From contig NC_083438.1 of the NCBI RefSeq assembly GCF_020745735.1, positions 38,421,949 to 38,485,948 on the forward strand: DNA of 64,000 nucleotides. Direction: 5' to 3'. Of this stretch, positions 36,211-62,874 are shown piece after piece. Position numbers and translations under genes: made by a program. Positions within the stretch are counted from its first letter, which is position 1; every line of letters starts with the position of its first letter. The DNA is from Hemiscyllium ocellatum (lineage: Eukaryota). The notes below the pieces were generated by a model. That model worked only from the letters and a program-made list of their open reading frames with translations, had not been told where the DNA came from and made no database searches.

Positions 36211-36214
36211 GAAC

Positions 36215-37821: not shown

Positions 37822-38115
37822 CGGTTCCCACCAACACAGCGACATCGGTCCCAGCAAAGGCTGGACTCTCCGAGGTCCCTGTGGCTCAGTGTATTGCGGC
37901 CTTTGGGAAACCAGCAGCAGATATCACCTGGAAATCCAGTCTCCATGGGAACCACACCACCATCCAGACGGCCAACAGCAACGGGACAGTGACTGTCAGC
38001 AGCCTGTACAAGCTGAGACCACGTCGTTCAGACAATGGTCAAACTGTGGCGTGTTTTATCACTCACCCAGCAACAGACAGCAGCAAGACATACCGCTTAC
38101 AACTGGAGATCTCCT
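37822..38115 (+). CDS. Nectin/PVR-family gene, exon 3 (IgC2 domain)
   Basis: Acceptor ..ccctgacag, donor GTAAGT at 38116, 294 nt, phase 1-1. VAQCIAAFGKPAADITW..NGTVTVSSLYKLRP..CFITHPA matches the nectin second-domain pattern. Confidence 0.93.
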
Positions 38116-38199: not shown

Positions 38200-38720
38200 T
38201 CATAAAATCCCTACAGTGTGAAAGCTGGCCATTTGGCCCATCAACTGTACTGCAACCCTCCGAAGAGCATCCCACCTGGAGCCATTCCCCAACTTTATCC
38301 CGATAACCCTGCATTCCCCATGGATAACCTACATTGTTGAGATATCCCCGGATACTATGGGACAATTTCCCATGGCCAATCCACCCTAACCTGCACATCC
38401 TTGGGCACTATGAGACAATTTCCCATGGTCAATCCATCCTAACCTACACATCCCTGGGCACTATGGGATAATTTCCCATGGCCAATCCACCCAAACCTGC
38501 TCATTCCTGGGCACTATGGGACAATTTTCCATGGCCAATCCACCCGACCTACACATCCCTGGACTCCAGTGAACAATTTAGCATTGCCAATCCATCCTGA
38601 CCTGTACGTCTTTGGATTGTGAGAGGAAGCCCGCACAGACACAGGGAAAATGTGCAAACTCCACACAGGCAGGAATAGCTGGTGGAATCAAACCTGGGTC
38701 CCTGGCGCTGTGAGGCAGCA
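38200..38720 (-). mobile_element. Diverged HE1-type SINE with ~4-5 tandem 53-bp units
   Basis: Units at ~38350-38600, followed by a partial core and head. Confidence 0.75.
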
Positions 38721-40506: not shown

Positions 40507-40624
40507 ACCCCCCAGAGGTGACTATAACGGGATATGATCAGAGCTGGAGTGTAAACAGCCGCAATGTTGTTGTGACATGTCACGCAGATGCCAATCCTCC
40601 AGCGACAACGTACACATGGCGAGG
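40507..40624 (+). CDS. Nectin/PVR-family gene, exon 4 (first half of Ig3)
   Basis: Acceptor ccctttctctctgtag, donor GTAAGT at 40625, 118 nt. (Y)PPEVTITGYDQSWSVNSRNVVVTCHADANPPATTYTWRG; T from exon 3 + AC completes Tyr in frame. Confidence 0.92.
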
Positions 40625-40799
40625 GTAAGTTACAACGGGCGGAATTCATTCCGAAAGTCAGCTGACAGGTTTTCGGTAAATATCGGGTAATTGTATGTTC
40701 ATAAACTATTTGTGATCTGGGAACATGGAATATCGGAGTAGGCCACTCTGCCCATCGAGCCTGTCCTGCACCTTCATTGTGATCGTGGTTGGTCACCCA

Positions 40800-41330
40800 A
40801 CCCAGTTGCTGCTTTCTCATTCGAGCCAAAGGTAAAGGATCAGAATGAGGCCATTTGGCCCATTGGGGATACTGCACCATTCTATCCTGGCTGACATGTT
40901 TCTCAACCCCATTCTCCTGACTTCTCTCCATAACCTTTGACCCCCCTCTCTAATCAGCAACCTATCTATTTCAGTCTTAACCACACTCAGTGACGCGTCC
41001 CCCTGAAGCAATGAGTCCCACAGATTCCCCACCCTCCCGCGGAAGAAATCCCTCCCCATCTCAGTTCCAAAGGGCTGTCCCTTCCCCCTGAGGCAGTGCC
41101 CTCGGGCCCTGGTCTCTCCTCCTGGTGGGAACATCTTCTCCGTGCCCACTCTATTCAGACCCTCTCAGTGTTCTGTAAGGCTCAATCAGATCCCCCTCCT
41201 CACCCTTCACAACTCCATCAAGTACAGGCCCAGAGTCCTCAACGTCTCCTGGGAAGACCCGCCCTTCATCCCTGGGATTGTTCTAGTAAACCCACTCCAG
41301 GTCCCCTCCATAGACAGCACATCCTTCATT
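40800..41330 (-). mobile_element. Degenerate CR1 3' fragment
   Basis: MFPPGGETRARGHCLR..RVGNLWDSL..KTEIDRLL on the minus strand. Confidence 0.75.
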
Positions 41331-44300
41331 AGATTAGAATCTCTAAAGAGAAGAAACAGGCCATTTGGCCCATCAAGCCTGTTCTAACCCTCTGACAGGC
41401 ATCCCACCACACGTCCTACACATGTCAATGTAACCCCATATTTCCCATGGCCAATCCACCCTAACCTGCACATCCTGGGAATCTATGGGACAATTTCCGA
41501 TGGCCAATCCAACCTAACCTGCGCATCCTGGGAATCTATGGGACAATTTTCCATGGCCAATCCACCCTAACCTGCACATCCCTGGACATGATGGGACAAT
41601 TTCCCATGGCCAATCCACCCTAACCTACACATCCTGAGAATCTATGGGCCAATTTCCCATAGCCAATCCACCCTAACCTGCACATCCTGGGACACTATGG
41701 GACCATTTCCCATGGCCAATCCACCCTAACCTGCACATCCCTGGGCACTATGGGACCATTTCCCATGGCCAATCCACCCTAACCTGCACATCCCTGGACA
41801 CTATGGGCCAATTTCCCATAGCCAATCCACCCTAACCTGCACATCCTGGGACACTATGGGACAATTTCCCATGGCCAATCCACCCTGACCTGCACATCCC
41901 TGGGCACTATGGGACAATTTCTCATGGGCAATCCACCCTAACCTGCACATCCTGGGAATCTATGGGACAATTTCCCATGGCCAATCCACCCTAACCTGCA
42001 CATCCTGGGACACTATGGGACAATTTCCCATGGCCAAACCACCCTAACCTGCACATCCCTGGGGACTATGGGTCAAGTTCCCATGGCCAATTTTCCAAAC
42101 CTGCACATCCCTGGGCACTATGGGACAATTTCCCATGGCCAATCCATCCTGACCTGCACATCCCTGGGCACTATGGGACAATTTCCCACGGCCAATCCAC
42201 CCTAACCTGCACATCCTGGGACACTATGGGACAATTTCCCATGGCCAATCCACCCTGACCTGCACATCCTGGGAATCTAAGGGACAATTTCCCATGGCCA
42301 ATCGACCCTAACCTGCACATCCCTGGACATGATGGGACAATTTCCCATGGCCAATCCACCCTAACCTGCACATCCCTGGGCACTATGGGTCAATTTCCCA
42401 TGGCCAATCCCACCTAATCTGCACATCCCTGGGCACTATGGGACAATTTCCCATGGCCAATCCACCCTAACCTGCACATCCTGAGAATCCATGGGACACT
42501 TCCCCATGGCCAATCCACCCTAACCTGCACATCCCTGGGCACTATGGGACAATTTCCCATGGCCAATCCACCCTAACCTGCACATCCTGGGACACTATGG
42601 GACAATTTCCCATGGCCAAGCCACAATAACCTGCACATCCCCGGGCACTATGGGATAATTTCAGATGGCCATTCCACCCTAACCTGCACAACCTCGGAAT
42701 CTATGGGACAATTTCCCATGGCCAATCCACCCTAACCTGCACATCCCTGGGCACTATGGGACCATTTCCCATGGCCAGTCCACCCTAACATGCACATCCT
42801 GTGAATCTATGGGACAATTTCCCATGGCCAATTACCCTAACCTGCACATCCTGAGAATCTATGGGACAATTTCCCATCGCCAATCCACCCTAACCTGCAC
42901 ATCCCTGGACATGATGGGACAATTTCCCATGGCCAATCCACCCTAACCTGCACATCCCTGGGCACTATGGGACAATTTCCCATGGCCAATCCACCCTAAC
43001 CTGCACATCCTGAGAATCTATGGGCCAATTTCCCATAGCCAATCCACCCTAACCTGCACATCCTGGGACACTATGGGACAATTTCCCATGGCCAATCCAC
43101 CCTGACCTGCACATCCCTGGGCACTACGGGACAATTTCCCATGGCCAATCCACCCGAACCTACACATCCCTGGACTTGATGGGACAATTTCGCATTGCCA
43201 ATCCACCCTAACCTGCACATCCCTGGGCACTATGGGTCAATTTCCCATGGCCAATCCCCCCTATTCTGCACATCCATGGGCACTATGGGACAATTTCCCA
43301 TGGCCAATCCACCCTAACCTGCACATCCTGAGAATCCATGGGACACTTCCCCATGGCCAATCCACCCTAACCTGCACATCCTGGGACACTATGGGACTTT
43401 GTCCCATGGCCAATCCACCCTGACCTGCACATCCCTGGGCATTATGGGACTATTTCCCATGGCCAATCCACCCTAACCTGCACATCCCTGGGCACTATGG
43501 GTCAATTTCCCATGGCCAATCCCCCCTAATCTGCACATCCCTGGGCACTATGGGACAATTTCCCATGGCCAATCCACCTTAACCTGCACATCCATGGGCA
43601 CTATGGGACAATTTCCCATGGCCAATCCACCCTAACCTGCACATCCCTGGACACTATGGGACAATTTCCCATGGCCAATCCACCCTAACCTGCACATCCC
43701 TGAACACTACGGAACAATTTCCCATGGCCAATCCATCCTAACCTGTACATTTCTGGACACTATGGGACAATTTCCCATGGCCAATCCACCCTAACCTGCA
43801 CATCCCTGAACACTATGGGACAATTTCCCATGGCCAATCCATCCTAACCTGTACATTTCTGGACACTATGGGACAATTTCCCATGGCCAATATACCCTAA
43901 CCTGCACATCCTGGGAATCTATGGGACAATTTCCCATGGCCAATCCACCCTAACCTGCACATCCTGAGAATCCATGGGACAATTTCCCATGGCCAATCCA
44001 CCCTAACCTGCACATCCCTGGACACTATGGGACAATTTCCCATGGCCAAGCCACCATTACCTGCACATCCCCGGGCACTATGGGACAATTTCCCATGGCC
44101 AATCCACCCTAACCTGCACATCCCTGGGCACTATGGGTCAATTTCCCATGGCCAATCCCCCCTAATCTGCACATCCCTGGGCACTATGGGACAATTTCCC
44201 ATGCCAATCCACCCTAACCTGCACATCCTGAGAATCCATGGGACACTTCCCCATGGCCAATCCCCCTAACCTGCACATCCTGGGACACTATGGGACAATT

Positions 44301-47300
44301 TCCCATAGCCAATCCACCCTAACCTGCACATCCTGGGAATCTATGGGACAATTTCCCATGGCCAATCCACCCTAACCTGCACATCCCTGGGCACAATGGG
44401 ACAATTTCCCATGGTCAGTCCACCCTAACCTGCACATCCTGTGAATCTATGGGACAATTTCCCATGGCCAAGTACCCTAACCTGCACATCCTGAGAATCT
44501 ATGGGACAATTTCCCATAGCTAATCCACCCTAACCTGCACATCCTGGGACACTATGGGACCATTTCCCATGGCCAATCCACCCTAACCTGCACATCCCTG
44601 GGCACTATGGGACCATTTCCCATGGCCAATCCACCCTAACCTTCACATCCCTGGACACTATGGGCCAATTTCCCATGGCCAATTCACCCTAACCTGCACA
44701 TCCCTGGGCACTATGGGACCATTTCCCATGGCCAATCCACCCTAACCTGCACATCCCTGGACACTATGGGCCAATTTCCCATGGCCAATCCACCTTGACC
44801 TGCACATCCCTGGGCACTATGGGACAATTTCTCATGGGCAATCCACCCTAACCTGCACATCCTGGGAATCTATGGGACAATTTCCCATGGCCAATCCACC
44901 CTAACCTGCACATCCTGGGACACTATGGGACAATTTCCCATGGCCAAACCACCCTAACCTGCACATCCCTGGGCACTATGGGTCAAGTTCCCATGGCCAA
45001 TTTTCCAAACCTGCACATCCCTGGGCACTATGGGACAATTTCCCATGGCCAATCCATCCTGACCTGCACATCCCTGGGCACTATGGGACAATTTCCCACG
45101 GCCAATCCACCCTAACCTGCACATCCTGGGACACTATGGGACAATTTCCCATGGCCAATCCACCCTGACCTGCACATCCTGGGAATCTATGGGACAATTT
45201 CCCATGGCCAATCGACCCTAACCTGCACATCCCTGGACATGATGGGACAATTTCCCATGGCCAATCCACCCTAACCTGCACATCCCTGGGCACTATGGGT
45301 CAATTTCCCATGGCCAATCCCACCTAATCTGCACATCCCTGGGCACTATGGGACAATTTCCCATGGCCAATCCACCCTAACCTGCACATCCTGAGAATCC
45401 ATGGGACACTTCCCCATGGCCAATCCACCCTAACCTGCACATCCCTGGGCACTCTGGGACAATTTCCCATGGCCAAGCCACCATAACCTGCACATCCCCG
45501 GGCACTATGGGATAATTTCAGATGGCCATTCCACCCTAACCTGCACAACCTCGGAATCTATGGGACAATTTCCCATGGCCAATCCACCCTAACCTGCACA
45601 TCCCTGGGCACTATGGGACAATTTCCCATGGCCAGTCCACCCTAACCTGCACATCCTGGGACACTATGGGACCATTTCCCATGGCCAATCCACCCTAACC
45701 TGCACATCCTGAGAATCTATGGGCCAATTTCCCATAGCCAATCCACCCTAACCTGCACATCATGGGACACTATGGGACAATTTCCCATGGCCAATCCACC
45801 CTGACCTGCACATCCCTGGGCACTATGGGACAATTTCCCATGGCCAATCCACCCTAACCTGCACATCCCTGGACTTGATGGGACAATTTCCCATTGCCAA
45901 TCCACCCTAACCTGCACATCCCTGGGCACTATGGGTCAATTTCCCATGGCCAATCCCCCCTATTCTGCACATCCATGGGCACTATGGGACAATTTCCCAT
46001 GGCCAATCCACCCTAACCTGCACATCCTGAGAATCCATGGGACACTTCCCCATGGCCAATCCACCCTAACCTGCACATCCTGGGACACTATGGGACAATT
46101 TCCCATGGCCAATCCACCCTGACCTGCACATCCCTGGGCATTATGGGACAATTTCCCATGGCCAATCCACCCTAACCTGCACATCCTGGGAATCTATGGG
46201 ACAATTTCCCATGGCCAATCCACCCTAACCTGCACATCCCTGGACATGATGGGACAATTTCCCATGGCCAATCCACCCTAACCTGCACATCCCTGGGCAC
46301 TATTGGTCAATTTCCCATGGCAAATCCCCCCTAATCTGCACATCCCTGGGCACTATGGGACAATTTCCCATGGCCAATCCACCCTAACCTGCACATCCTG
46401 AGAATCCATGGGACACTTCCCCATGGCCAATCCACCCTAACCTGCACATCCTGGGACACTATGGGACAATTTCCCATGGCCAATCCACCCTGACCTGCAC
46501 ATCCCTGGGCATTATGGGACAATTTCCCATGGCCAATCCACCCTAACCTGCACATCCTGGGAATCTATGGGACAATTTCCCATGGCCAATCCACCCTAAC
46601 CTGCACATCCCTGGGCACAATGGGACAATTTCCCATGGTCAGTCCACCCTAACCTGCACATCCTGTGAATCTATGGGACAATTTCCCATGGCCAATTACC
46701 CTAACCTGCACATCCTGAGAATCTATGGGACAATTTCCCATAGCCAATCCACCCTAACCTGCACATCCTGGGACACTATGGGACCATTTCCCATGGCCAA
46801 ACCACCCTAACCTGCACATCCCTGGGCACTATGGGACCAATTCCTTGGCCAATCCACCCTAACCTTCACATCCCTGGACACGATGGGCCAATTTCCCATG
46901 GCCAATCCACCCCAACCTGCACATCCCTGGGCACTATGGGACCATTTCCCATGGCCAATCCACCCTAACCTGCACATCCCTGGACACTATGGGTCAATTT
47001 CCCATAGCCAATCCACCCTAACCTGCACATCCTGGGACACTATGGGACAATTTCCCATGGCCAATCCACCCTGACCTGCACATCCCTGGGCACTATGGGA
47101 CAATTTCTCATGGGCAATCCACCCTAACCTGCACATCCTGGGGATCTATGGGACAATTTCCCATGGCCAATCCACCCTAACCTGCACATCCTGGGACACT
47201 ATGGGACAATTTCCCATGGCCAAACCACCCTAACCTGCACATCCCTGGGCACTATGGGTCAAGTTCCCATGGCCAATTATCCAAACCTGCACATCCCTGG

Positions 47301-50300
47301 GCACTATGGGACAATTTCCCATGGCCAATCCATCCTGACCTGCACATCCCTGGGCACTATGGGACAATTTCCCACGGCCAATCCACCCTGACCTGCACAT
47401 CCTGGGACACTATGGGACAATTTCCCATGGCCAATCCACCCTGACCTGCACATCCTGGGAATCTATGGGACAATTTCCCATGGCCAATCCACCCTAACCT
47501 GCACATCCCTGGACATGATGGGACAATTTCCCATGGCCAATCCACCCTAACCTGCACATCCCTGGGCACTATGGGTCAATTTCCCTTGGCCAATCCCACC
47601 TAATCTGCACATCCCTGGGCACTATGGGACAATTTCCCATGGCCAATCCACCCTAACCTGCACATCCTGAGAATCCATGGGACACTTCCCCATGGCCAAT
47701 CCACCCTAACCTGCACATCCCTGGGCACTATGGGACAATTTCCCATGGCCAATCCACCCTAACCTGCACATCCTGGGACACTATGGGACAGTTTCCCATG
47801 GCCAAGCCACCATAACCTGCACATCCCCGGGCACTATGGGATAATTTCAGATTGCCATTCCACCCTAACCTGCACAACCTCGGAATCTATGGGACAATTT
47901 CCCATGGCCAATCCACCCTAACCTGCACATCCCTGGGCACTATGGGACAATTTCCCATGGCCAGTCCACCCTAACCTGCACATCCTGTGAATCTATGGGA
48001 CAATTTCCCATGGCCAATTACCCTAACCTGCACATCCTGAGAATCTATGGGACAATTTCCCATCGCCAATCCACCCTAACCTGCACATCCCTGGACATGA
48101 TGGGACAATTTCCCATGGCCAATCCACCCTAACCTGCACATCCCTGGGCACTATGGGACAATTTCCCATGGCCAATCCACCCTAACCTGCACATCCTGAG
48201 AATCTATGGGCCAATTTCCCATGGCCAATCCACCCTAACCTGCACATCCTGGGACACTATGGGACAATTTCCCATGGCCAATCCACCCTGACCTGCACAT
48301 CCCTGGGCACTATGGGACAATTTCCCATGGCCAATCCACCCTAACCTGCACATCCCTGGACTTGATGGGACAATTTCCCATTGCCAATCCACCCTAACCT
48401 GCACATCCCTGGGCACTATGGGTCAATTTCCCATGGCCAATCCCCCCTATTCTGCACATCCATGGGCACTATGGGACAATTTCCCATGGCCAATCCACCC
48501 TAACCTGCACATCCTGAGAATCCATGGGACACTTCCCCATGGCCAATCCACCCTAACCTGCACATCCTGGGACACTATGGGACTTTGTCCCATGGCCAAT
48601 CCACCCTGACCTGCACATCCCTGGGCATTATGGGACAATTTCCCATGGCCAATCCACCCTAACCTGCACATCCTGGGAATCTATGGGACAATTTCCCATG
48701 GCCAATCACCCTAACCTGCACATCCCTGGACATGATGGGACAATTTCCCATGGCCAATCCACCCTAACCTGCACATCCCTGGGCACTATGGGTCAATTTC
48801 CCATGGCCAATCCCCCCTAATCTGCACATCCCTGGGCACTATGGGACACTTTCCCATGGCCAATCCACCTTAACCTGCACATCCATGGGCACTATGGGAC
48901 AATTTCCCATGACCAATCCACCCTAAACTGCACATCCCTGGACACTATGGGACAATTTCCCATGGCCAATCCACCCTAACCTGCACATTCCTGGGCAGTA
49001 TGAGACAATTTCCCATAGCCAATACACCCTAACCTGCACATCCCTGGGCACTATGGGACAATTTCCCATGGCCAATCCACCCTAACCTGCACATCCCTGA
49101 ACACTATGGGACAATTTCCCATGGCCAATCCATCCTAACCTGTACATTTCTGGACACTATGGGACAATTTCACATGGCCAATATACCCTAACCTGCACAT
49201 CCTGGGAATCTATGGGACAATTTCCCATGGCCAATCCACCCTAAACTGCACATCCTGAGAATCCATGGGACAATTTCCCATGGCCAATCCACCCTAACCT
49301 GCACATCCTGAGAATCTATGGGCCAATTTCCCATGGCCAATCCACCCTAACCTGCACATCCTGGGACACTATGGGACAATTTCCCATGGCCAATCCACCC
49401 TGACCTGCACATCCCTGGGCACTATGGGACAATTTCCCATGGCCAATCCACCCTAACCTGCACATCCCTGGACTTGATGGGACAATTTCCCATTGCCAAT
49501 CCACCCTAACCTGCACATCCCTGGGCACTATGGGTCAATTTCCCATGGCCAATCCCCCCTATTCTGCACATCCATGGGCACTATGGGACAATTTCCCATG
49601 GCCAATCCACCCTAACCTGCACATCCTGAGAATCCATGGGACACTTCCCCATGGCCAATCCACCCTAACCTGCACATCCTGGGACACTATGGGACAATTT
49701 CCCATGGCCAATCCACCCTGACCTGCACATCCCTGGGCATTATGGGACAATTTCCCATGGCCAATCCACCCTAACCTGCACATCCTGGGAATCTATGGGA
49801 CAATTTCCCATGGCCAATCACCCTAACCTGCACATCCCTGGACATGATGGGACAATTTCCCATGGCCAATCCACCCTAACCTGCACATCCCTGGGCACTA
49901 TGGGTCAATTTCCCATGGCCAATCCCCCCTAATCTGCACATCCCTGGGCACTATGGGACACTTTCCCATGGCCAATCCACCTTAACCTGCACATCCATGG
50001 GCACTATGGGACAATTTCCCATGACCAATCCACCCTAAACTGCACATCCCTGGACACTATGGGACAATTTCCCATGGCCAATCCACCCTAACCTGCACAT
50101 TCCTGGGCAGTATGAGACAATTTCCCATAGCCAATACACCCTAACCTGCACATCCCTGGGCACTATGGGACAATTTCCCATGGCCAATCCACCCTAACCT
50201 GCACATCCCTGAACACTATGGGACAATTTCCCATGGCCAATCCATCCTAACCTGTACATTTCTGGACACTATGGGACAATTTCACATGGCCAATATACCC

Positions 50301-53300
50301 TAACCTGCACATCCTGGGAATCTATGGGACAATTTCCCATGGCCAATCCACCCTAAACTGCACATCCTGAGAATCCATGGGACAATTTCCCATGGCCAAT
50401 CCACCCTAACCTGCACATCCATGGGCACTATGGGACAATTTCCCATGGCCAATCCACCCTAACCAGCACATCCTGAGAATCCATGGGACACTTCCCCATG
50501 GCCAAGCCACCCTAACCTGCACATCCTGGGACACTATGGGACAATTTCCCATGGCCAATCCACCCTGACCTGCACATCCCTGGGCATTATGGGACAATTT
50601 CCCATGGCCAATCCACCCTAACCTGCACATCCTGGGAATCTATGGGACAATTTCCCATGGCCAATCCACCCTAACCTGCACATCCCTGGGCACTATGGGA
50701 CAATTTCCCATGTCCAATCCACCCTAACCTGCACATCCTGAGAATCTATGGGCCAATTTCCCATAGCCAATCCACCCGAACCTGCACATCCTGGGACACT
50801 ATGGGACAATTTCCCATGGCCAATCCACCCTAACCTGCACATCCCTGGGCATTATGGGACAATTTCCCATGGCCAATCCACCCTAACCTGCACATCCTGG
50901 GAATCTATGGGACAATTTCCCATGGCCAATCCACCCTAACCTGCACATCCCTGGACATGATGGGACAATTTCCCATGGCCAATCCACCCTAAACTGCACA
51001 TCCCTGGGCACTATTGGTCAATTTCCCATGGCAAATCCCCCCTAAACTGCACATCCCTGGGCACTATGGGACAATTTCCCATGGCCAATCCACCCTAACC
51101 TGCACATCCTGAGAATCCATGGGACACTTCCCCATGGCCAATCCACCCTAACCTGCACATCCTGGGACACTATGGGACAATTTCCCATGGCCAATCCACC
51201 CTGACCTGCACATCCCTGGGCATTATGGGACAATTTCCCATGGCCAATCCACCCTAACCTGCACATCCTGGGAATCTATGGGACAATTTCCCATGGCCAA
51301 TCCACCCTAACCTGCACATCCCTGGGCACAATGGGACAATTTCCCATGGTCCGTCCACCCTAACCTGCACATCCTGTGAATCTAGGGGACAATTTCCCAT
51401 GGCCAATTACCCTAACCTGCACATCCTGAGAATCTATAGGACAATTTCCCATAGCCAATCCACCCTAACCTGCACATCCTGGGACACTATGGGACAGTTT
51501 CCCATGGCCAATCCACCCAAACCTGCACATCCCTGGGCACTATGGGACCATTTCCCATGGCCAATCCACCCTAACCTTCACATCCCTGGACACTATGGGC
51601 CAATTTCCCATGGCCAATCCACCCTGACCTGCACATCCCTGGGCATTATGGGACTATTTCCCATGGCCAATCCACCCTAACCTGCACATCCTGAGAATCC
51701 ATGGGACACTTCCCCATGGCCAATCCACCCTAACCTGCACATCCTGGGACACTATGGGACAATTTCCCATGGCCAATCCATCCTGACCTGCACATCCCTG
51801 GGCACTATGGGACAATTTCTCATGGGCAATCCACCCTAACCTGCACATCCTGGGAATCTATGGGACAATTTCCCATGGCCAATCCACCCTAACCTGCACA
51901 TCCTGGGACACTATGGGACAATTTCCCATGGCCAAACCACCCTAACCTGCACATCCCTGGGCACTATGGGTCAAGTTCCCATGGCCAATTATCCAAACCT
52001 GCACATCCCTGGGCACTATGGGACAATTTCCCATGGCCAATCCATCCTGACCTGCACATCCCTGGGCACTATGGGACAATTTCCCACGGCCAATCCACCC
52101 TAACCTGCACATCCTGGGACACTATGGGACAATTTCCCATGGCCAATCCACCCTGACCTGCACATCCTGGGAATCTATGGGACAATTTCCCATGGCCAAT
52201 CGACCCTAACCTGCACATCCCTGGACATGATGGGACAATTTCCCATGGCCAATCCACCCTAACCTGCACATCCCTGGGCACTATGGGTCAATTTCCCATG
52301 GCCAATCCCACCTAATCTGCACATCCCTGGGCACTATGGGACAATTTCCCATGGCCAAACCACCCTAACCTGCACATCCTGAGAATCCATGGGACACTTC
52401 CCCATGGCCAATCCACCCTAACCTGCACATCCCTGGGCACTATGGGACAATTTCCCATGGCCAATCCACCCTAACCTGCACATCCTGGGACACTATGGGA
52501 CAGTTTCCCATGGCCAAGCCACCATAACCTGCACATCCCCGGGCACTATGGGATAATTTCAGATGGCCATTCCACCCTAACCTGCACAACCTCGGAATCT
52601 ATGGGACAATTTCCCATGGCCAATCCACCCTAACCTGCACATCCCTGGGCACTATGGGACAATTTCCCATGGCCAGTCCACCCTAACCTGCACATCCTGT
52701 GAATCTATGGGACAATTTCCCATGGCCAATTACCCTAACCTGCACATCCTGAGAATCTATGGGACAATTTCCCATCGCCAATCCACCCTAACCTGCACAT
52801 CCCTGGACATGATGGGACAATTTCCCATGGCTAATCCACCCTAACCTGCACATCCCTGGGCACTATGGGACAATTTCCCATGGCCAATCCACCCTAACCT
52901 GCACATCCTGAGAATCTATGGGCCAATTTCCCATAGCCAATCCACCCTAACCTGCACATCCTGGGACACTATGGGACAATTTCCCATGGCCAATCCACCC
53001 TGACCTGCACATCCCAAGGCACTATGGGACAATTTCCCATGGCCAATCCACCCTAACCTGCACATCCCTGGACTTGATGGGACAATTTCCCATGGCCAAT
53101 CCACCCTAACCTGCACATCCCTGGGCACTATGGGTCAATTTCCCATGGCCAATCCCCCCTATTCTGCACATCCATGGGCACTATGGGACAATTTCCCATG
53201 GCCAATCCACCCTAACCTGCACATCCTGAGAATCCATGGGACACTTCCCCATGGCCAATCCACCCTAACCTGCACATCCTGGGACACTATGGGACAATTT

Positions 53301-56300
53301 CCCATGGCCAATCCACCCTGACCTGCACATACCTGGGCATTATGGGACTATTTCCCATGGCCAATCCACCCTAACCTGCACATCCTGAGAATCCATGGGA
53401 CACTTCCCCATGGCCAATCCACCCTAACCTGCACATCCTGGGACACTATGGGACAATTTCCCATGGCCAATCCACCCTGACCTGCACATCCCTGGGCACT
53501 ATGGGACAATTTCTCATGGGCAATCCACCCTAACCTGCACATCCTGGGAATCTATGGGACAATTTCCCATGGCCAATCCACCCTAACCTGCACATCCTGG
53601 GACACTATGGGACAATTTCCCATGGCCAAACCACCCTAACCTGCACATCCCTGGGCACTATGGGTCAAGTTCCCATGGCCAATTATCCAAACCTGCACAT
53701 CCCTGGGCACTATGGGACAATTTCCCATGGCCAATCCATCCTGACCTGCACATCCCTGGGCACTATGGGACAATTTCCCACGGCCAATCCACCCTAACCT
53801 GCACATCCTGGGACACTATGGGACAATTTCCCATGGCCAATCCACCCTGACCTGCACATCCTGGGAATCTATGGGACAATTTCCCATGGCCAATCGACCC
53901 TAACCTGCACATCCCTGGACATGATGGGACAATTTCCCATGGCCAATCCACCCTAACCTGCACATCCCTGGGCACTATGGGTCAATTTCCCATGGCCAAT
54001 CCCACCTAATCTGCACATCCCTGGGCACTATGGGACAATTTCCCATGGCCAATCCACCCTAACCTGCACATCCTGAGAATCCATGGGACACTTCCCCATG
54101 GCCAATCCACCCTAACCTGCACATCCCTGGGCACTATGGGACAATTTCCCATGGCCAATCCACCCTAACCTGCACATCCTGGGACACTATGGGACAGTTT
54201 CCCATGGCCAAGCCACCATAACCTGCACATCCTCGGGCACTATGGGATAATTTCAGATGGCCATTCCACCCTAACCTGCACAACCTCGGAATCTATGGGA
54301 CAATTTCCCATGGCCAATCCACCCTAACCTGCACATCCCTGGGCACTATGGGACAATTTCAAATGGCCAGTCCACCCTAACCTGCACATCCTGTGAATCA
54401 ATGGGACAATTTCCCATGGCCAATTACCCTAACCTGCACATCCTGAGAATCTATGGGACAATTTCCCATCGCCAATCCACCCTAACCTGCACATCCCTGG
54501 ACATGATGGGACAATTTCCCATGGCTAATCCACCCTAACCTGCACATCCCTGGGCACTATGGGACAATTTCCCATGGCCAATCCACCCTAACCTGCACAT
54601 CCTGAGAATCTATGGGCCAATTTCCCATCGCCAATCCACCCTAACCTGCACATCCTGGGACACTATGGGACAATTTCCCATGGCCAATTACCCTAACCTG
54701 CACATCCTGAGAATCTATGGGACAATTTCCCATCGCCAATCCACCCTAACCTGCACATCCCTGGACATGATGGGACAATTTCCCATGGCTAATCCACCCT
54801 AACCTGCACATCCCTGGGCACTATGGGACAATTTCCCATGGCCAATCCACCCTAACCTGCACATCCTGAGAATCTATGGGCCAATTTCCCATAGCCAATC
54901 CACCCTAACCTGCACATCCTGGGACACTATGGGACAATTTCCCATGGCCAATCCACCCTGACCTGCACATCCCAAGGCACTATGGGACAATTTCCCATGG
55001 CCAATCCACCCTAACCTGCACATCCCTGGACTTGATGGGACAATTTCCCATGGCCAATCCACCCTAACCTGCACATCCCTGGGCACTATGGGTCAATTTC
55101 CCATGGCCAATCCCCCCTATTCTGCACATCCATGGGCACTATGGGACAATTTCCCATGGCCAATCCACCCTAACCTGCACATCCTGAGAATCCATGGGAC
55201 ACTTCCCCATGGCCAATCCACCCTAACCTGCACATCCTGGGACACTATGGGACAATTTCCCATGGCCAATCCACCCTGACCTGCACATACCTGGGCATTA
55301 TGGGACTATTTCCCATGGCCAATCCACCCTAACCTGCACATCCTGAGAATCCATGGGACACTTCCCCATGGCCAATCCACCCTAACCTGCACATCCTGGG
55401 ACACTATGGGACAATTTCCCATGGCCAATCCACCCTGACCTGCACATCCCTGGGCACTATGGGACAATTTCTCATGGGCAATCCACCCTAACCTGCACAT
55501 CCTGGGAATCTATGGGACAATTTCCCATGGCCAATCCACCCTAACCTGCACATCCTGGGACACTATGGGACAATTTCCCATGGCCAAACCACCCTAACCT
55601 GCACATCCCTGGGCACTATGGGTCAAGTTCCCATGGCCAATTATCCAAACCTGCACATCCCTGGGCACTATGGGACAATTTCCCATGGCCAATCCATCCT
55701 GACCTGCACATCCCTGGGCACTATGGGACAATTTCCCACGGCCAATCCACCCTAACCTGCACATCCTGGGACACTATGGGACAATTTCCCATGGCCAATC
55801 CACCCTGACCTGCACATCCTGGGAATCTATGGGACAATTTCCCATGGCCAATCGACCCTAACCTGCACATCCCTGGACATGATGGGACAATTTCCCATGG
55901 CCAATCCACCCTAACCTGCACATCCCTGGGCACTATGGGTCAATTTCCCATGGCCAATCCCACCTAATCTGCACATCCCTGGGCACTATGGGACAATTTC
56001 CCATGGCCAATCCACCCTAACCTGCACATCCTGAGAATCCATGGGACACTTCCCCATGGCCAATCCACCCTAACCTGCACATCCCTGGGCACTATGGGAC
56101 AATTTCCCATGGCCAATCCACCCTAACCTGCACATCCTGGGACACTATGGGACAGTTTCCCATGGCCAAGCCACCATAACCTGCACATCCTCGGGCACTA
56201 TGGGATAATTTCAGATGGCCATTCCACCCTAACCTGCACAACCTCGGAATCTATGGGACAATTTCCCATGGCCAATCCACCCTAACCTGCACATCCCTGG

Positions 56301-59300
56301 GCACTATGGGACAATTTCAAATGGCCAGTCCACCCTAACCTGCACATCCTGTGAATCAATGGGACAATTTCCCATGGCCAATTACCCTAACCTGCACATC
56401 CTGAGAATCTATGGGACAATTTCCCATCGCCAATCCACCCTAACCTGCACATCCCTGGACATGATGGGACAATTTCCCATGGCTAATCCACCCTAACCTG
56501 CACATCCCTGGGCACTATGGGACAATTTCCCATGGCCAATCCACCCTAACCTGCACATCCTGAGAATCTATGGGCCAATTTCCCATCGCCAATCCACCCT
56601 AACCTGCACATCCTGGGACACTATGGGACAATTTCCCATGGCCAATCCACCCTGACCTGCACATCCCTGGGCACTATGGGACAATTTCCCATGGCCAATC
56701 CACCCTAACCTGCACATCCCTGGACTTGATGGGACAATTTCCCATTGCCAATCCACCCTAACCTGCACATCCCTGGGCACTATGGGTCAATTTCCCATGG
56801 CCAATCCCCCCTATTCTGCACATCCATGGGCACTATGGGACAATTTCCCATGGCCAATCCACCCTAACCTGCACATCCTGAGAATCCATGGGACACTTCC
56901 CCATGGCCAATCCACCCTAACCTGCACATCCTGGGACACTATGGGACAATTTCCCATGGCCAATCCACCCTGACCTGCACATCCCTGGGCATTATGGGAC
57001 AATTTCCCATGGCCAATCCACCCTAACCTGCACATCCTGGGAATCTATGGGACAATTTCCCATGGCCAATCACCCTAACCTGCACATCCCTGGACATGAT
57101 GGGACAATTTCCCATGGCCAATCCACCCTAACCTACACATCCCTGGGCACTATGGGTCAATTTCCCATGGCCAATCCCCCCTAATCTGCACATCCCTGGG
57201 CACTATGGGACACTTTCCCATGGCCAATCCACCTTAACCTGCACATCCATGGGCACTATGGGACAATTTCCCATGACCAATCCACCCTAAACTGCACATC
57301 CCTGGACACAATGGGACAATTTCCCATGGCCAATCCACCCTAACCTGCACATTCCTGGGCAGTATGAGACAATTTCCCATGGCCAATACACCCTAACCTG
57401 CACATCCCTGGGCACTATGGGACAATTTCCCATGGCCAATCCACCCTAACCTGCACATCCCTGAACACTATGGGACAATTTCCCATGGCCAATCCATCCT
57501 AACCTGTACATTTCTGGACACTATGGGACAATTTCACATGGCCAATATACCCTAACCTGCACATCCTGGGAATCTATGGGACAATTTCCCATGGCCAATC
57601 CACCCTAAACTGCACATCCTGAGAATCCATGGGACAATTTCCCATGGCCAATCCACCCTAACCTGCACATCCCTGGACTTGATGGGACAATTTCCCATTG
57701 CCAAGCCACCATTACCTGCACATCCTCGGGCACTATGGGACAATTTCCCATGGCCAATCCACCCTATTCTGCACATCCCTGGACACTATGGGACAATTTC
57801 CCATGGCCAATCCACCCTAACCTGCACATCCTGAGAATCCATGGGACACTTCCCCATGGCCAAGCCACCCTCACCTGCACATCCTGGGACACTATGGGAC
57901 AATTTCCCATGGCCAATCCACCCTGACCTGCACATCCATGGGCACTATGGGACAATTTCCCATGGCCAATCCACCCTAACCTGCACATCCCTGGACACTA
58001 TGGGACAATTTCCCATGGCCAATCCACCCTAACCTGCACATTCCTGGGCAGTATGAGACAATTTCCCATGGCCAATACACCCTAACCTGCACATCCCTGG
58101 GCACTATGGGACAATTTCCCATGGCCAAGCCACCATTACCTGCACATCCCCGGGCACTATGGGACAATTTCCCATGGCCAATCCACCCTAACCTGCACAT
58201 CCCTGGGCACTATGGGTCAATTTCCCATGGCCAATCCCCCCTAATCTGCACATCCCTGGGCACTATGGGACAATTTCCCATGGCCAATCCACCCTAACCT
58301 GCACATCCTGAGAATCCATGGGACACTTCCCCATGGCCAATCCACCCTAACCTGCACATTCTGGGACACTATGGGACAATTTCCCATGGCCAATCCACCC
58401 TGACCTGCACATCCCTGGGCATTATGGGACAATTTCCCATGGCCAATCCACCCTAACCTGCACATCCTGGGAATCTATGGGACAATTTCCCATGGCCAAT
58501 CCACCCTAACCTGCACATCCCTGGGCACTATGGGACAATTTCCCATGGCCAATCCCCCCTATTCTGCACATCCATGGGCACGATGGGACAATTTCCCATG
58601 GCCAATCCACCCTAACCTGCACATCCTGAGAATCCATGGGACACTTCCCCATGGCCAATCCACCCTAACCTGCACATTCTGGGACACTATGGGACAATTT
58701 CCCATGGCCAATCCACCCTGACCTGCACATCCCTGGGCATTATGGGACAATTTCCCATGGCCAATCCACCCTAACCTGCACATCCTGGGAATCTATGGGA
58801 CAATTTCCCATGGCCAATCACCCTAACCTGCACATCCCTGGACATGATGGGACAATTTCCCATGGCCAATCCACCCTAACCTGCACATCCCTGGGCACTA
58901 TGGGTCAATTTCCCATGGCCAATCCCCCCTAATCTGCACATCCCTGGGCACTATGGGACACTTTCCCATGGCCAATCCACCTTAACCTGCACATCCATGG
59001 GCACTATGGGACAATTTCCCATGACCAATCCACCCTAAACTGCACATCCCTGGACACTATGGGACAATTTCCCATGGCCAATCCACCCTAACCTGCACAT
59101 TCCTGGGCAGTATGAGACAATTTCCCATAGCCAATACACCCTAACCTGCACATCCCTGGGCACTATGGGACAATTTCCCATGGCCAATCCACCCTAACCT
59201 GCACATCCCTGAACACTATGGGACAATTTCCCATCGCCAATCCATCCTAACCTGTACATTTCTGGACACTATGGGACAATTTCACATGGCCAATATACCC

Positions 59301-62300
59301 TAACCTGCACATCCTGGGAATCTATGGGACAATTTCCCATGGCCAATCCACCCTAAACTGCACATCCTGAGAATCCATGGGACAATTTCCCATGGCCAAT
59401 CCACCCTAACCTGCACATCCCTGGACATGATGGGACAATTTCCCATGGCCAATCCACCCTAACCTGCACATCCCTGGGCACTATGGGTCAATTTCCCATG
59501 GCCAATCCCCCCTAATCTGCACATCCCTGGGCACTATGGGACAATTTCCCATGGCCAATCCACCTTAACCTGCACATCCATGGGCACTATGGGACAATTT
59601 CCCATGGCCAATCCACCCTAACTTGCACATCCCTGGACACTATGGGACAATTTCCCATGGCCAATCCACCCTAACCTGCACATTCCTGGGCAGTATGAGA
59701 CAATTTCCCATGGCCAATACACCCTAACCTGCACATCCCTGGGCACTATGGGACAATTTCCCATGGCCAATCCACCCTAACCTGCACATCCCTGAACACT
59801 ATGGGACAATTTCCCATGGCCAATCCATCCTAACCTGTACATTTCTGGACACTATGGGACAATTTCCCATGGCCAAGCCACCATTTCCTGCACATCCCCG
59901 GGCACTATGGGACAATTTCCCATGGCCAATCCACCCTAACCTGCACATCCCTGGGCACTATGGGTCAATTTCCCATGGCCAATCCCCCTTAATCTGCACA
60001 TCCCTGGGCACTATGGGACAATTTCCCATTGCCAATCCACCCTAACCTGCACATCCTGAGAATCCATGGGACACTTCCCCATGGCCAATCCACCCTAACC
60101 TGCACATCCTGGGACACTATGGGACAATTTCCCATGGCCAAATACCCTGACCTGCACATCCCTGGGCATTATGGGACAATTTCCCATGGCCAATCCACCC
60201 TAACCTGCACATCCTGGGAATCTATGGGACAATTTCCCATGGCCAATCCACCCTAACCTGCACATCCCTGGGCACTATGGGACAATTTCCCATGGTCAGT
60301 CCACCCTAACCTGCACATCCTGTGAATCTATGGGACAATTTCCCATGGCCAATTACCCTAACCTGCACATCCTGAGAATCTATGAGACAATTTCCCACAG
60401 CCAATCCACCCTAACCTGCACATCCCTGGGCACTATGGGACCATTTCCCATGGCCAATCCACCCTGACCTGCACATCCCTGGACACTATGGGCCAATTTC
60501 CCATGGCCAATCCACCCTAACATGCACATCCTGGGACACTATGGGACAATTTCCCATGGCCAATCCACCCTGACCTGCACATCCCTGGGCACTATGGGAT
60601 AATTTCCCATGGCCAATCCACCCTAACCTGCACATCCTGGGAATCTATGGGACAATTTCCCATGGCCAATCCACCCTAACCTTCACATCCCTGGACACTA
60701 TGGGCCAATTTCCCATGGCCAATCCACCCTAACCTGCACATCCCTGGGCACTATGGGACCATTTCCCATGGCCAATCCACCCTAACCTGCACATCCCTGG
60801 ACACTATGGGCCAATTTCCCTTAGCCAATCCACCCTAACATGCACATCCTGGGAATCTATGGGACAATTTCCCATGGCCAATACACCCTAACCTGCACAT
60901 CCCTGGGCATTATGGGACTATTTCCCATGGCCAATCCACCCTAACCTGCACATCCTGGGAATCTATGGGACAATTTCCCATGGCCAATCCACCCTAACCT
61001 GCACATCCCTGGACATGATGGGACAATTTCCCATGGCCAATCCACCCTAACCTGCACATCCCTGGGCACTATGGGTCAATTTCCCATGGCCAATCCCCCC
61101 TAATCTGCACATCCCTGGGCACTATGGGACAATTTCCCATGGCCAATCCACCCTAATCTGCACATCCCTGGGCACTATGGGACAATTTCCCATGGCCAAT
61201 CCACCCTAACCTGCACATCCCTGGACACTATGGGACAATTTCCCATGGCCAATCCACCCTAACCTGCACATCCCTGGGCAGTATGAGACAATTTCCCATG
61301 GCCAATACACCCTAACCTGCACATCCCTGGGCACTATGGGACAATTTCCCATGGCCAATCCACCCTAACCTGCACATCCCTGAACACTATGGGACAATTT
61401 CCCATGGCCAATCCATCCTAACCTGTACATTTCTGGACACTATGGGACAATTTCCCATGGCCAATATACCCTAACCTGCACATCCTGGGAATCTATGGGA
61501 CAATTTCCCATGGCCAATCCACCCTAACCTGCACATCCTGAGAATCCATGGGACAATTTCCCATGGCCAATCCACCCTAACCTGCACATCCCTGGACACT
61601 ATGGGACAATTTCCCATGGCCAATCCACCCTAACCTGCACATCCCCGGGCACTATGTGACAATTTCCCATGGCCAATCCACCCTAACCTGCACATCCCTG
61701 GGCACTATGGGTCAATTTCCCATGGCCAATCCCCCCTAATCTGCACATCCCTGGGCACTATGGGACAATTTCCCATGGCCAATCCACCCTAACCTGCACA
61801 TCCTGAGAATCCATGGGACACTTCCCCATGGCCAATCCACCCTAACCTGCACATCCTGGGACACTATGGGACAATTTCCCATGGCCAATCCACCCTGACC
61901 TGCACATCCCTGGGCATTATGGGACAATTTCCCATGGCCAATCCACCCTAACCTGCACATCCTGGGAATCTATGGGACAATTTCCCATGGCCAATCCACC
62001 CTAACCTGCACATCCCTGGGCACTATGGGACAATTTCCCATGGTCAGTCCACCCTAACCTGCACATCCTGTGAATCTATGGGACAATTTCCCATGGCCAA
62101 TTACCCTAACCTGCACATCCTGAGAATCTATGGGACAATTTCCCATAGCCAATCCACCCTAACCTGCACAACATGGGACACTATGGGACCATTTCCCATG
62201 GCCAATCCACCCTAACCTGCACATCCCTGGGCACTATGGGACCATTTCCCATGGCCAATCCACCCTAACCTTCACATCCCTGGACACTATGGGCCAATTT

Positions 62301-62790
62301 CCCATGGCCAATCCACCCTAACATGCACATCCTGGGACACTATGGGACAATTTCCCATGGCCAAGCCACCCTAACCTGCACATCCCCGGGCACTATGGGA
62401 CAATTTCCGATAGCCAATCCACCCTAACCTGCACATCCTGGGAATCTATGGGACAATTTCCCATGGCCAATCCACCCTAACCTGCACATCCCTGGGCACT
62501 ATGGGTCAATTTCCCATGGCCAATCCACCCTAACCTGCGCATCCTGGGAATCTATGGGACAATTTCCGATGGCCAATCCACCCTAACCTGCGCATCCTGG
62601 GACACTATGGAGTACTTTCCAATGGATAACCCACTCTAACCTGCACATGTTTGAACTGTGGGAGGAAACCGGAGCACCTGTTGGAAACCCACGCAGACAC
62701 ACGGAGAACACACAAGGTCCCCACAGACAGTTGTCTGAGGGTGGAATCAAACCCGCGTCCCTGGTGCTGGGACGCAGCAGTGCTAACCAC
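41325..62790 (-). mobile_element. Single HE1-type SINE whose interior has expanded to ~21 kb
   Basis: SINE tail remnant at 41325-41440 (ttagattaga..aaacaggccatttggccc); core and tRNA head at 62645-62790 (tgtgggaggaaaccggagcac..gcagcagtgctaaccactgagcc); only 53-bp units between them. Confidence 0.8.
41441..62648. repeat. 53-bp satellite, ~400 units, with higher-order repeats
   Basis: Continuous tandem array; ~21200/53 is about 400 units; diagnostic variant blocks recur at near-multiples of 53. Confidence 0.97.
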
Positions 62791-62874
62791 TGAGCCTCTG
62801 TGTGACAATGGTGAAGGTACAGAGGACCAAAATACTCCTCACAGTGTTCCAAATGCAGTCTGACCAGTGCCTTA

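What the first reader, a model, noticed from the sequence alone, without database searches (positions are those of the whole stretch)
41325..62790. A 21-kb satellite grown inside a single SINE copy within a nectin-gene intron
Seen: the array is bracketed by the tail (41325-41440) and the core/head (62645-62790) of one minus-strand SINE. Its 53-bp unit aligns to the SINE internal segment (acactacgggcaatttagcatggccaattcacctgacccgcacatct at ~11190-11240). A ~320-bp element has therefore become ~21.5 kb and makes intron 4 at least 23.4 kb. Inference: a SINE-to-satellite transition with both parental flanks still in place.
Basis: partly seen in the sequence, partly recalled or inferred. Interest (0 to 1): 0.85.

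Follow-up and report, generated by a model that had tools for sequence, protein, structure and literature searches.

The report
SINE-derived satellite swelling a shark intron
One very old ~400-bp mobile element (a SINE) in an intron of an epaulette-shark nectin-like immune-receptor gene has multiplied a 53-bp piece of itself 400 times; whale and zebra sharks keep the same element at the same spot with only one or two copies, so the before and after states can be compared directly, although this kind of repeat is already known from lizards and snakes.

Summary
TRF finds 400.7 copies of a 53-bp unit at 41440-62648. The array is bracketed in phase by the tail (41328-41439) and by the edge unit plus tRNA-like head (62615-62806) of one minus-strand SINE. 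It lies in the intron after exon 40507-40624 of a nectin-1-like gene.

At the homologous site, with both flanks collinear, the same SINE carries 2 units in whale shark. It carries 1 unit plus a diverged partial unit in both zebra-shark twin genes. Those introns are 3.4-4.1 kb, against at least 23.4 kb here.

Growth had two phases. Neighbouring monomers differ by about 10%. However, 300 of 400 monomers lie in multi-monomer blocks whose copies differ by only 0-1.2%.

It is not a one-off. Four smaller arrays of the same unit sit in other SINE copies in this window. This scan already met a 19-kb array of the same family elsewhere in this genome. Array consensus sequences group by shark lineage, not by locus, which points to concerted evolution between loci.

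SINE-derived satellites are described in squamates (PMC10702118). I found no report for sharks. Array length could not be checked with long reads. Verdict: a real, well-dated new member of a known kind.

The parts
41328..41439 (-). 3' part (tail) of the host SINE. It contains the remnant of the native partial unit (...CCATGGGAAAT|ATGGGGTTAC...) and the terminal ATTAG-type simple repeat.
   Evidence: Read directly. Collinear with the SINE tail in whale shark L002 and zebra shark L003/L004. 55-64% identical to other SINE tails in the window, so it is very old.
41440..62614 (-). Array of 400 monomers of 53/52 bp. The unit in SINE sense is ATGTGCAGGTTAGGGTGGATTGGCCATGGGAAATTGTCCCATAGTG(C/T)CCAGGG.
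   Evidence: TRF. Monomer split. Block structure. Private 3' haplotypes absent from the four other arrays.
52715..56630 (-). Perfect tandem duplication of a 37-monomer (1,958 bp) block inside the array. It is either the youngest growth step or an assembly artefact.
   Evidence: Diagonal run of 37 monomers at lag 37 with 0 mismatches.
62615..62663 (-). Decayed native edge unit (U1) of the host SINE on the head side.
   Evidence: 11 differences from the array consensus. Homologous to U1 of the whale- and zebra-shark copies.
62664..62806 (-). SINE body and tRNA-derived head (B box GGTTTGATTCC; A-box-like GGCTCAGTGG).
   Evidence: Collinear with L002 36261-36633.
40507..40624 (+). Exon encoding the first half of the third Ig domain (..YPPEVTITGYDQSWSVNSRNVVVTCHADANPPATTYTWR..) of the nectin-1-like gene. 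Its donor opens the array-bearing intron.
   Evidence: Identical to residues of P0157, nectin-1-like isoform X2 of Hemiscyllium ocellatum.
37822..38115 (+). C2-set Ig exon of the same gene.
   Evidence: Pfam C2-set_2 6e-16. PDB nectin-1 5e-12. Splice sites read.
38354..38604 (-). Sister array: 4.8 units inside another old SINE (38200-38748) in the preceding intron.
   Evidence: TRF. Orthologous arrays have 4.5 copies in whale shark, 10.3 in zebra shark and at least 6.2 in C. punctatum.
36331..37134 (-). Sister array: 15.2 units inside a SINE (36216-37292).
20344..21059 (-). Sister array of at least 7 units. It is split by a young plus-strand SINE (20572-20888) and ends at an N run (21060-21287).
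3523..4625 (-). Sister array: 20.9 units inside a SINE (3406-4785). Its head is called tRNA-like by ARAGORN.
   Evidence: The C. punctatum homologue has a single unit.

Best explanation
This is one locus of a dispersed family of SINE-derived 52/53-bp tandem repeats of orectolobiform sharks, grown here to satellite size.

Shown: an ancient tRNA-derived SINE inserted antisense in intron 4 of a nectin-like receptor gene, before that gene was duplicated into its twin. The element natively carried one full copy of the segment plus a diverged partial copy directly behind it. That gives a built-in direct repeat one unit apart.

Inferred: misaligned pairing at this repeat (replication slippage or unequal sister-chromatid exchange) added units. 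Whale shark stands at 2 units and zebra shark at 1. The lineage of the epaulette shark first built an array of a few dozen monomers, which diverged to about 10% from each other. Then it multiplied blocks of 8 to 37 or more monomers several-fold in a recent burst; block copies differ by only 0-1.2%.

Shown: the result is 400 monomers (21.2 kb), and the intron grew from about 3.5-4 kb to at least 23.4 kb.

Inferred: the array is tolerated because the strand read with the gene has almost no GT or AG dinucleotides. The unit sequence is kept in step with the other arrays of the genome, probably by exchange between loci.
For: A single SINE that grew in place:
- Both flanks and both SINE halves are collinear with whale-shark L002. 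L002 35657-36411 matches window 40833-41587, 36261-36633 matches 62509-62874, and 36636-37033 matches 63048-63448.
- They are also collinear with zebra-shark L003 and L004.
- Units there number 2, 1 and 1, each plus a partial unit.
- Introns there are 3.4-4.1 kb.

One family:
- Five arrays in the window share the same unit consensus and the same head-side phase.
- Array 31-mers are held at 27-31% by DNA runs of two other organisms, and summed word depth on unit bins is 10^4-10^5 times that of the unique exon in three organisms.

Local growth:
- Private 3' haplotypes present in a large share of the monomers (about 150 of the 375 53-bp monomers) are absent from the other four arrays.
- 300 of 400 monomers lie in repeated blocks of at least 8 monomers, with a mean divergence of 0.83% between copies. 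Any two monomers of the array, adjacent or distant, differ by about 5.5 of 53 positions.
- Marker monomers recur 6-8 times.

Tolerance in the intron:
- The gene-sense strand has 92 GT and 134 AG, against 775 and 906 expected, and no GTRAG.

Lineage-specific unit type across loci.
Against: - Array length is taken from the assembly only. No long reads were available, and the listed contigs stop at 41358/41381, before the junction at 41440.
- The perfect 1,958-bp duplication could be an assembly artefact.
- Target-site duplications are not detectable, so the single-insertion claim rests on comparative collinearity.
- The direction of change (growth here rather than shrinkage elsewhere) rests on parsimony over three comparators.
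- The closest relatives (Chiloscyllium chromosome-level assemblies) and the paralogous twin in this species could not be read, so the expansion is dated only loosely.
- The 399 array units do not carry the 11 private differences of the local edge unit. The founder units may therefore have come from another locus rather than from this SINE's own copy.
Confidence: 0.82

Rival explanations
1. The founder units were imported. Ectopic gene conversion or recombination with another array-bearing SINE copy seeded or overwrote this locus, and it then expanded locally. Under this reading the satellite is not made of this SINE's own segment.
For: The array units lack the 11 private differences of the local edge unit and match the family consensus. 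All six hemiscylliid arrays share four derived changes. These occur even at loci whose orthologues in whale and zebra sharks keep the other type. Array 3523-4625 consists of the family-type unit, while its C. punctatum homologue has one native-type unit.
Against: An early local birth followed by within-array homogenisation, with decay limited to the edge units, gives the same picture at this locus. The GGGAAAT motif of the unit is native to the local partial unit in all four species copies. The C. punctatum record is a short-read scaffold that may have collapsed an array.
Confidence: 0.4
2. Assembly over-expansion: the array is real but much shorter, and the assembler inflated it.
For: A perfect 37-monomer tandem duplication lies at 52715-56630. 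Another array of the family ends at an N run. No listed contig bridges the junction.
Against: There are 133 distinct monomers in an irregular, non-periodic order with graded block divergence of 0-1.2%, which is not a simple loop. There is no N in the array. A second array of 19 kb was noted elsewhere in the same genome (not checked by me).
Confidence: 0.08
3. The array came in with the element: a SINE already carrying a long VNTR retrotransposed here, in the manner of SVA elements.
For: Every assessable array in the window has both SINE termini. The unit has no TTTT run that would stop RNA polymerase III.
Against: The same insertion in three comparators has 1-2 units. The flanks of array-bearing copies do not form a tight subfamily: heads are 73-84% and tails 55-78% identical. 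A 21-kb Pol III transcript is implausible.
Confidence: 0.02
4. The ancestor had a large array that shrank in whale and zebra sharks.
For: Tandem arrays contract as well as expand. The orthologous intron-3 array varies from 4.5 to 10.3 copies among species.
Against: It needs independent collapses to 1-2 units in the whale shark and in both zebra-shark paralogues. Those copies have old, decayed units: 7-8 differences from their lineage's array consensus in zebra shark and 2-5 in whale shark. The window's block copies differ by 1.2% or less, which indicates recent gain.
Confidence: 0.03
5. The array is a selected regulatory element, for example 368 CCAAT boxes and 304 TTAGGG motifs acting in the intron.
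For: Motif counts. The unit consensus is conserved between shark families.
Against: There is no expression, binding or constraint data. The same unit sits in many unrelated SINE copies. Copy number varies freely between species. The hairpin in the unit is no more stable than in shuffled sequences (z about 0).
Confidence: 0.03

Closest known systems
SINE-derived satellites (sSat) of squamate reptiles (Vassetzky, Kosushkin and Ryskov 2023, PMC10702118)
   Same: Tandem repeats whose unit is an internal part of a tRNA-related SINE. The terminal units run on into the SINE up to its end. There are many loci per genome, most with few units and rare loci with hundreds (320, about 950 and over 1,200 units are reported). 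Units are more alike within and between loci than the SINE copies are. Locus-specific subvariants occur in patterned order.
   Different: The host is a cartilaginous fish and the SINE family is different. The unit is 52/53 bp, against 67-215 nt. In every assessable array here both SINE termini are kept, which the paper calls a minor variant. The array lies in an intron of an expressed-type gene rather than in a shown subtelomeric site. The pre-expansion state is preserved at the same site in related species and in a paralogue. The authors state that they do not know whether sSats exist outside squamates.
SVA elements of hominids (SINE-VNTR-Alu composite retrotransposons; from general knowledge)
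   Same: A variable-number tandem repeat sits between SINE-related ends.
   Different: SVA moves as a whole and its VNTR is part of the transcript. Here the array grew after insertion.
Satellites born from tandem repeats inside LTR retrotransposons in plants (Vondrak et al. 2020, PMC7004042; title and abstract only)
   Same: Short internal tandem repeats of a mobile element act as seeds of long arrays.
   Different: A different class of element. Those arrays are usually freed from their parent element, whereas here both ends remain.
Higher-order-repeat satellites such as primate alpha satellite (general knowledge)
   Same: Neighbouring monomers are about 10% different, while multi-monomer blocks are near-identical.
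   Different: There is no regular period. Blocks of 8 to 37 monomers or more recur at irregular lags of 21-291 monomers. The array is only 21 kb and is not centromeric as far as can be seen.
Earlier finding of this scan, s1-207194 (19-kb, 363-copy array of the same unit elsewhere in this genome)
   Same: Same unit family and same architecture between the head and tail of one decayed SINE copy.
   Different: A different locus. For the present locus the homologous sites in two other species and in a paralogue were read, which dates the growth.

Membership tests
SINE-derived satellite (sSat sensu Vassetzky et al. 2023) | The tandem unit is homologous to part of a SINE present in the same genome. 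| tested here: met
   The unit consensus aligns to the internal segment of canonical copies at 41/53. BLAST of SINE copies against the arrays gives 79-87% identity.
SINE-derived satellite (sSat sensu Vassetzky et al. 2023) | The terminal unit(s) continue into SINE sequence up to the SINE terminus. | tested here: met
   The tail lies at 41328-41439 and the head at 62615-62806, in phase with the units. This holds on both sides here.
SINE-derived satellite (sSat sensu Vassetzky et al. 2023) | Many loci per genome, with units more alike within and between loci than the SINE copies are. | tested here: met
   Five arrays in 64 kb have consensus sequences 0-3 differences apart, whereas the host SINE flanks are 55-84% identical. 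Very high summed word depth on the units. Earlier notes report further loci.
SINE-derived satellite (sSat sensu Vassetzky et al. 2023) | Preference for subtelomeric regions. | not testable with these tools
   The chromosomal position of the window is not given.
tRNA-derived SINE (V-SINE/HE1-like, as earlier notes call it) | Pol III head with A and B boxes and a tRNA-like fold. | tested here: met
   B box GGTT(C/T)GATTCC and A box TGGCTCAGTGG in several copies. ARAGORN calls the head at 4709-4791(-) tRNA-like. The main copy keeps the B box, but its A box is degraded.
tRNA-derived SINE (V-SINE/HE1-like, as earlier notes call it) | The conserved central V-domain and a 3' end shared with the HER1 LINE. 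| not tested
   No HE1 or HER1 consensus was available. The defining paper (PMC155270) is not held, and Rfam has no match. The family name remains a lead, not a result.
Classical satellite DNA | Very long arrays in heterochromatin (centromeric or telomeric). | tested here: inconclusive
   21 kb lies at the lower edge of satellite size, and the array lies in a gene intron. Chromatin state is unknown.
SVA-like composite retrotransposon | The VNTR is mobilised together with its flanks, so new insertions carry the array. | tested here: not met
   The same insertion has 1-2 units in whale and zebra sharks. TSDs are not detectable.
Regular higher-order-repeat satellite | A constant multi-monomer period. 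| tested here: not met
   No dominant lag is seen. Blocks recur at irregular spacings.

The most novel reading that the evidence does not exclude
Thousands of short tandem arrays, embedded in separate euchromatic SINE copies, evolve in concert across the genome. All six hemiscylliid arrays read here share a 53-bp unit with four derived changes (..CCATGGGAAATTGTCCC..). Twelve of the thirteen whale- and zebra-shark arrays share the 52-bp form (..CC(A/G)TGCTAAATTACCC..). The split holds even at orthologous loci. That would require frequent sequence exchange between dispersed SINE-internal arrays, with occasional runaway loci such as this one. If so, an old SINE subfamily is a standing, genome-wide nursery of satellites whose before-and-after states can be read locus by locus across shark species.
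Probability: 0.4. Interest if true: 0.65.

Novelty: new member of a known kind. Interest (0 to 1): 0.45.

Why it matters
How satellites arise from mobile elements is mostly inferred from end products. Here the start state and the end state are both preserved, at the same site between the same flanks. The start is one unit plus a partial unit in an ancient SINE; the intermediate is 2 units; the end is 400 units. The monomer pattern also records a slow phase followed by a recent burst of block amplification. This extends SINE-derived satellites from squamates to cartilaginous fish. It also shows that such an array can enlarge a functional gene's intron about six-fold. Finally, it provides a set of orthologous loci for testing whether dispersed arrays exchange sequence. 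It does not reveal a new kind of element.

Tried and rejected
- **Target-site duplications.** None was detectable around the main SINE, and most younger copies also gave none. The only candidate is an approximate 8-bp repeat at the young SINE at 20572-20888, seen by eye. The test is therefore uninformative.
- **Regular higher-order repeat.** Base-level and monomer-level autocorrelation show no constant period.
- **Hairpin-driven expansion.** The derived unit forms ATGGGA-AATTG-TCCCAT (-6.5 kcal/mol, against -3.9 for the canonical segment). However, z is about 0 against shuffles for the unit and the dimer, and -1.2 on the other strand. This is not support.
- **Orientation bias.** All five arrays are antisense to the gene, but so are about 7 of 9 array-free SINE copies in the window. 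The bias is therefore not specific to arrays.
- **Rfam.** No family matched at gathering score in the window.
- **Read support.** Only Logan contigs were served. The flank-to-tail junction at 41328 is bridged in run X1 (record 41221-41358), but no listed contig crosses 41440.
- **Orthologues in the closest relatives.** The C. punctatum short-read scaffold ends at a point matching about window 39858, before exon 4. For the chromosome-level C. punctatum, C. plagiosum and H. ocellatum records, only gene ranges were returned and no DNA.
- **L001.** I first read it as a strict orthologue of the window's gene. Its exon-3 residues and the ITAM-type tail of P0151 fit the twin gene better. I therefore treat it only as a homologue at least as old as the species split.
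- **Literature.** No paper on SINE-derived satellites in sharks was found in the held library.
Full report
**1. What is there**

Tandem Repeats Finder reports one array at 41440-62648 with period 53, 400.7 copies, 88% matches and score 30,901. An independent split gives 400 monomers, 375 of 53 bp and 25 of 52 bp, of which 133 are distinct. The window's N runs all lie elsewhere, at 19135-19385, 21060-21287 and 24970-25129.

To the left, 41328-41439 is the 3' part of a SINE lying on the minus strand. It ends in the family's ATTAG-type simple repeat. To the right, a decayed native unit (62615-62663) leads into the SINE body and a tRNA-like head that ends near 62806. Both junctions are in phase with the repeat unit. 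The whole element spans 21,479 bp.

The unit consensus in SINE sense is ATGTGCAGGTTAGGGTGGATTGGCCATGGGAAATTGTCCCATAGTGCCCAGGG. It aligns to the internal segment of canonical SINE copies such as 11190-11245 at 41 of 53 positions.

**2. Gene context**

The plus strand carries three Ig-type exons:
- a V-set exon at about 24190-24504 (Pfam 2e-12; best solved relatives are nectin-1 D1 domains, 4e-13);
- a C2-set exon at 37822-38115 (Pfam 6e-16);
- an exon at 40507-40624 with acceptor tctgtag| and donor GG|gtaagt.

The last two exons are identical to P0157, annotated as nectin-1-like isoform X2 of Hemiscyllium ocellatum. Its cytoplasmic tail has ITIM-like IVYASL and TVYADI motifs. The next coding exon (GLPEGAVIND...) is not in the window. 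The array-bearing intron is therefore at least 23,376 bp, of which 21,209 bp is array.

**3. The decisive comparison**

I used the V exon to reach annotated relatives. I then fetched the homologous genes of three comparators:
- whale shark, L002 (GCF_021869965.1, NC_063378.1);
- zebra shark inhibitory twin, L003 (GCA_030684315.1);
- zebra shark activating twin, L004 (same assembly, adjacent gene).

All three are collinear with the window on both sides of the array. For whale shark the matches are:
- L002 35315-35695 with window 40390-40763;
- L002 35657-36411 with window 40833-41587;
- L002 36261-36633 with window 62509-62874;
- L002 36636-37033 with window 63048-63448.

The zebra-shark loci match equivalently.

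The same minus-strand SINE sits there between the same flanks. Whale shark has two full units followed by a diverged partial unit (...CCGTGGGAAAT|GTGAGGTTATGGGG...). Both zebra-shark genes have one full unit plus the same partial unit. Intron 4 measures 3,771, 4,051 and 3,368 bp respectively.

Three conclusions follow:
- The two flanks in the window are halves of one insertion.
- The insertion predates the duplication that made the twin genes.
- The simplest history is one unit plus a partial unit in the ancestor, then growth to 400 in the lineage of the epaulette shark.

**4. How the array grew**

Monomers differ by about 5.5 of 53 positions whether they are neighbours or far apart. There is no constant higher-order period. 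Even so, 300 of the 400 monomers lie in runs of at least 8 monomers that recur elsewhere in the array. The copies differ by 0.83% on average, within a range of 0-1.2%. One 37-monomer block (1,958 bp) is tandemly duplicated without a single change. Marker monomers occur 6-8 times. Two of them (R and S) always lie 10-11 monomers apart.

I infer two phases. First, a modest array of a few dozen monomers existed long enough for its units to diverge. Second, repeated unequal exchanges of multi-kilobase blocks multiplied it several-fold.

The homologous C. punctatum intron sequence differs from the window by 10-14%. The block amplification therefore looks far younger than that split. This dating is an inference from divergence, not a measurement.

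**5. The array belongs to a family**

The same unit forms arrays inside four other minus-strand SINE copies of the window:
- 3523-4625, 20.9 copies;
- 20344-21059, at least 7 copies, split by a young SINE;
- 36331-37134, 15.2 copies;
- 38354-38604, 4.8 copies.

All start at the same point on the head side, and their consensus sequences differ by 0-3 positions. Their host SINEs are old: heads are 73-84% and tails 55-78% identical to other copies. The young subfamily, 90-98% alike, carries no arrays.

The intron-3 array is orthologous across species, with 4.5 copies in whale shark, 10.3 in zebra shark and at least 6.2 in C. punctatum.

Sampled 31-mers of the main array are held at 27-31% by DNA runs of two other coded organisms, and at 14-17% by RNA runs of three. 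Summed contig word depth over unit bins is 10^4 to 10^5 times that of the unique exon in three organisms. The tool warns that this is not a copy number.

The main array also has private variants. Five 3' haplotypes, carried by about 150 of the 375 53-bp monomers, are absent from the other four arrays. This fits local amplification.

**6. An unexpected pattern**

Array consensus sequences group by lineage, not by locus. All six hemiscylliid arrays (five here, one in C. punctatum) have the 53-bp form with CATGGGAAATTGTCCC. Twelve of the thirteen whale- and zebra-shark arrays have a 52-bp form with C(A/G)TGCTAAATTACCC. The two forms differ by the same four changes even at orthologous loci.

The local edge unit of the main SINE has 11 differences from the array consensus, and the 399 array units do not carry them. 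The 20.9-unit array at 3523-4625 corresponds to a single native-type unit in the C. punctatum homologue. That record is a short-read scaffold and may have collapsed an array.

The GGGAAAT motif is native to the partial unit in all species. A recombinant of the partial and full units can therefore explain part of the derived form, but not all four changes. Exchange between dispersed arrays is the most economical reading. It is not shown.

**7. Tolerance in the intron**

On the gene-sense strand the array has 92 GT and 134 AG dinucleotides, where composition predicts 775 and 906, and no GTRAG. The opposite strand has 1,906 GT, 1,517 AG and 378 AGGT. I infer that this orientation offers almost no cryptic splice sites.

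The orientation itself is not special to arrays, because most array-free SINE copies of the window are antisense too. CpG is nearly absent: 52 against 1,271 expected.

**8. What is known**

SINE-derived satellites were defined in squamates. They have many loci, mostly of few units, and rare loci of 320 to over 1,200 units. Their terminal units run into the SINE, and their units are homogeneous within and between loci. The authors say they do not know whether such satellites exist elsewhere (PMC10702118). I found no report for sharks in the held library.

This scan had already noted a 19-kb array of the same unit elsewhere in this genome, and smaller arrays at other loci. I used those notes as leads. 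I tested the claims of species sharing (partly supported) and of a hairpin (not significant).

**9. Limits**

The array's length rests on the assembly. Only short-read contigs were served, and none of the listed ones crosses 41440. Target-site duplications are undetectable. The name HE1/V-SINE for the host family was not tested. The closest relatives' chromosome-level records returned no DNA.

**10. Verdict**

It is a well-dated shark example of a repeat class already described in reptiles. It belongs to a genome-wide family rather than being a singular event. The lineage-specific unit type across loci is the part most worth following.

Noticed in passing
window arrays versus L001 17985-18310, the L002 arrays and the L003/L004 arrays: Array unit consensus groups by shark lineage rather than by locus. 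The 53-bp ..GGGAAATTGTCCC.. form is found in Hemiscyllium and Chiloscyllium. The 52-bp ..GCTAAATTACCC.. form is found in whale and zebra sharks. This holds even at orthologous arrays and suggests concerted evolution between dispersed loci.
   Followed up: partly
window 3406-4785 versus L001 3990-4310: The SINE holding the 20.9-unit array has a homologue in the C. punctatum short-read scaffold with a single native-type unit. The same neighbouring 5'-truncated SINE follows it. This could be gain by import, loss, or assembly collapse.
   Followed up: partly
window 20572-20888 (+): A young canonical SINE (94-97% identical to other young copies) is inserted inside one of the 53-bp arrays, with an approximate 8-bp target duplication (CTGTGGGCA / CCTGGGCA). 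That array is therefore older than the young subfamily's activity. The array then ends at the N run 21060-21287.
   Followed up: partly
window 62875-63047: About 173 bp just right of the SINE head are absent at the homologous site in whale and zebra sharks. This is a later small insertion. It contains the stretch 62966-63005, which another note of this scan calls a hammerhead core.
   Followed up: no
window 17663-17745, 24190-24504, 37822-38115, 40507-40624: The window's gene is the ITIM-tailed member (P0157) of a nectin-like twin pair. In zebra shark the two twins are adjacent and divergently oriented (L003, L004). The twins are more alike within H. ocellatum (3 differences in exon 3) than the ITAM twin is to its C. 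punctatum counterpart (about 10).
   Followed up: partly
window 41098-41381 (read laying): Contigs in two individuals carry a copy of the left flank plus SINE tail that is 5-6% divergent. This is probably intron 4 of the twin gene, which has the same SINE in zebra shark.
   Followed up: no
window 35335-36211: A 49-bp tandem array (17.9 copies, 96% matches) directly abuts the tail of the array-bearing SINE at 36216.
   Followed up: no
window 1-188, 2158-2310, 5662-6726, 7952-8245; L001 8338-8443: A 45/46-bp tandem repeat (GTGTGTACCATCCCCTCCC...) occurs in both orientations upstream of the gene. It is also present in the C. punctatum scaffold.
   Followed up: no
L003 12451-13457; L004 6385-7159; L002 1685-2412: Interstitial telomere-like (CCCTAA)n arrays of 0.7-1 kb lie near the V exon in the zebra- and whale-shark loci. 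TRF lists none in the window.
   Followed up: no
L002 30836-31223 and L004 17007-17392: An inverted array in intron 3 shows the same 207-bp (four-unit) higher-order period in whale shark and in the zebra-shark activating twin. The window's intron 3 has no counterpart.
   Followed up: no
window 33549-35258 (-): A 570-aa open frame with a reverse-transcriptase domain (Pfam RVT_1, 4e-32) belongs to a LINE inside intron 2.
   Followed up: no
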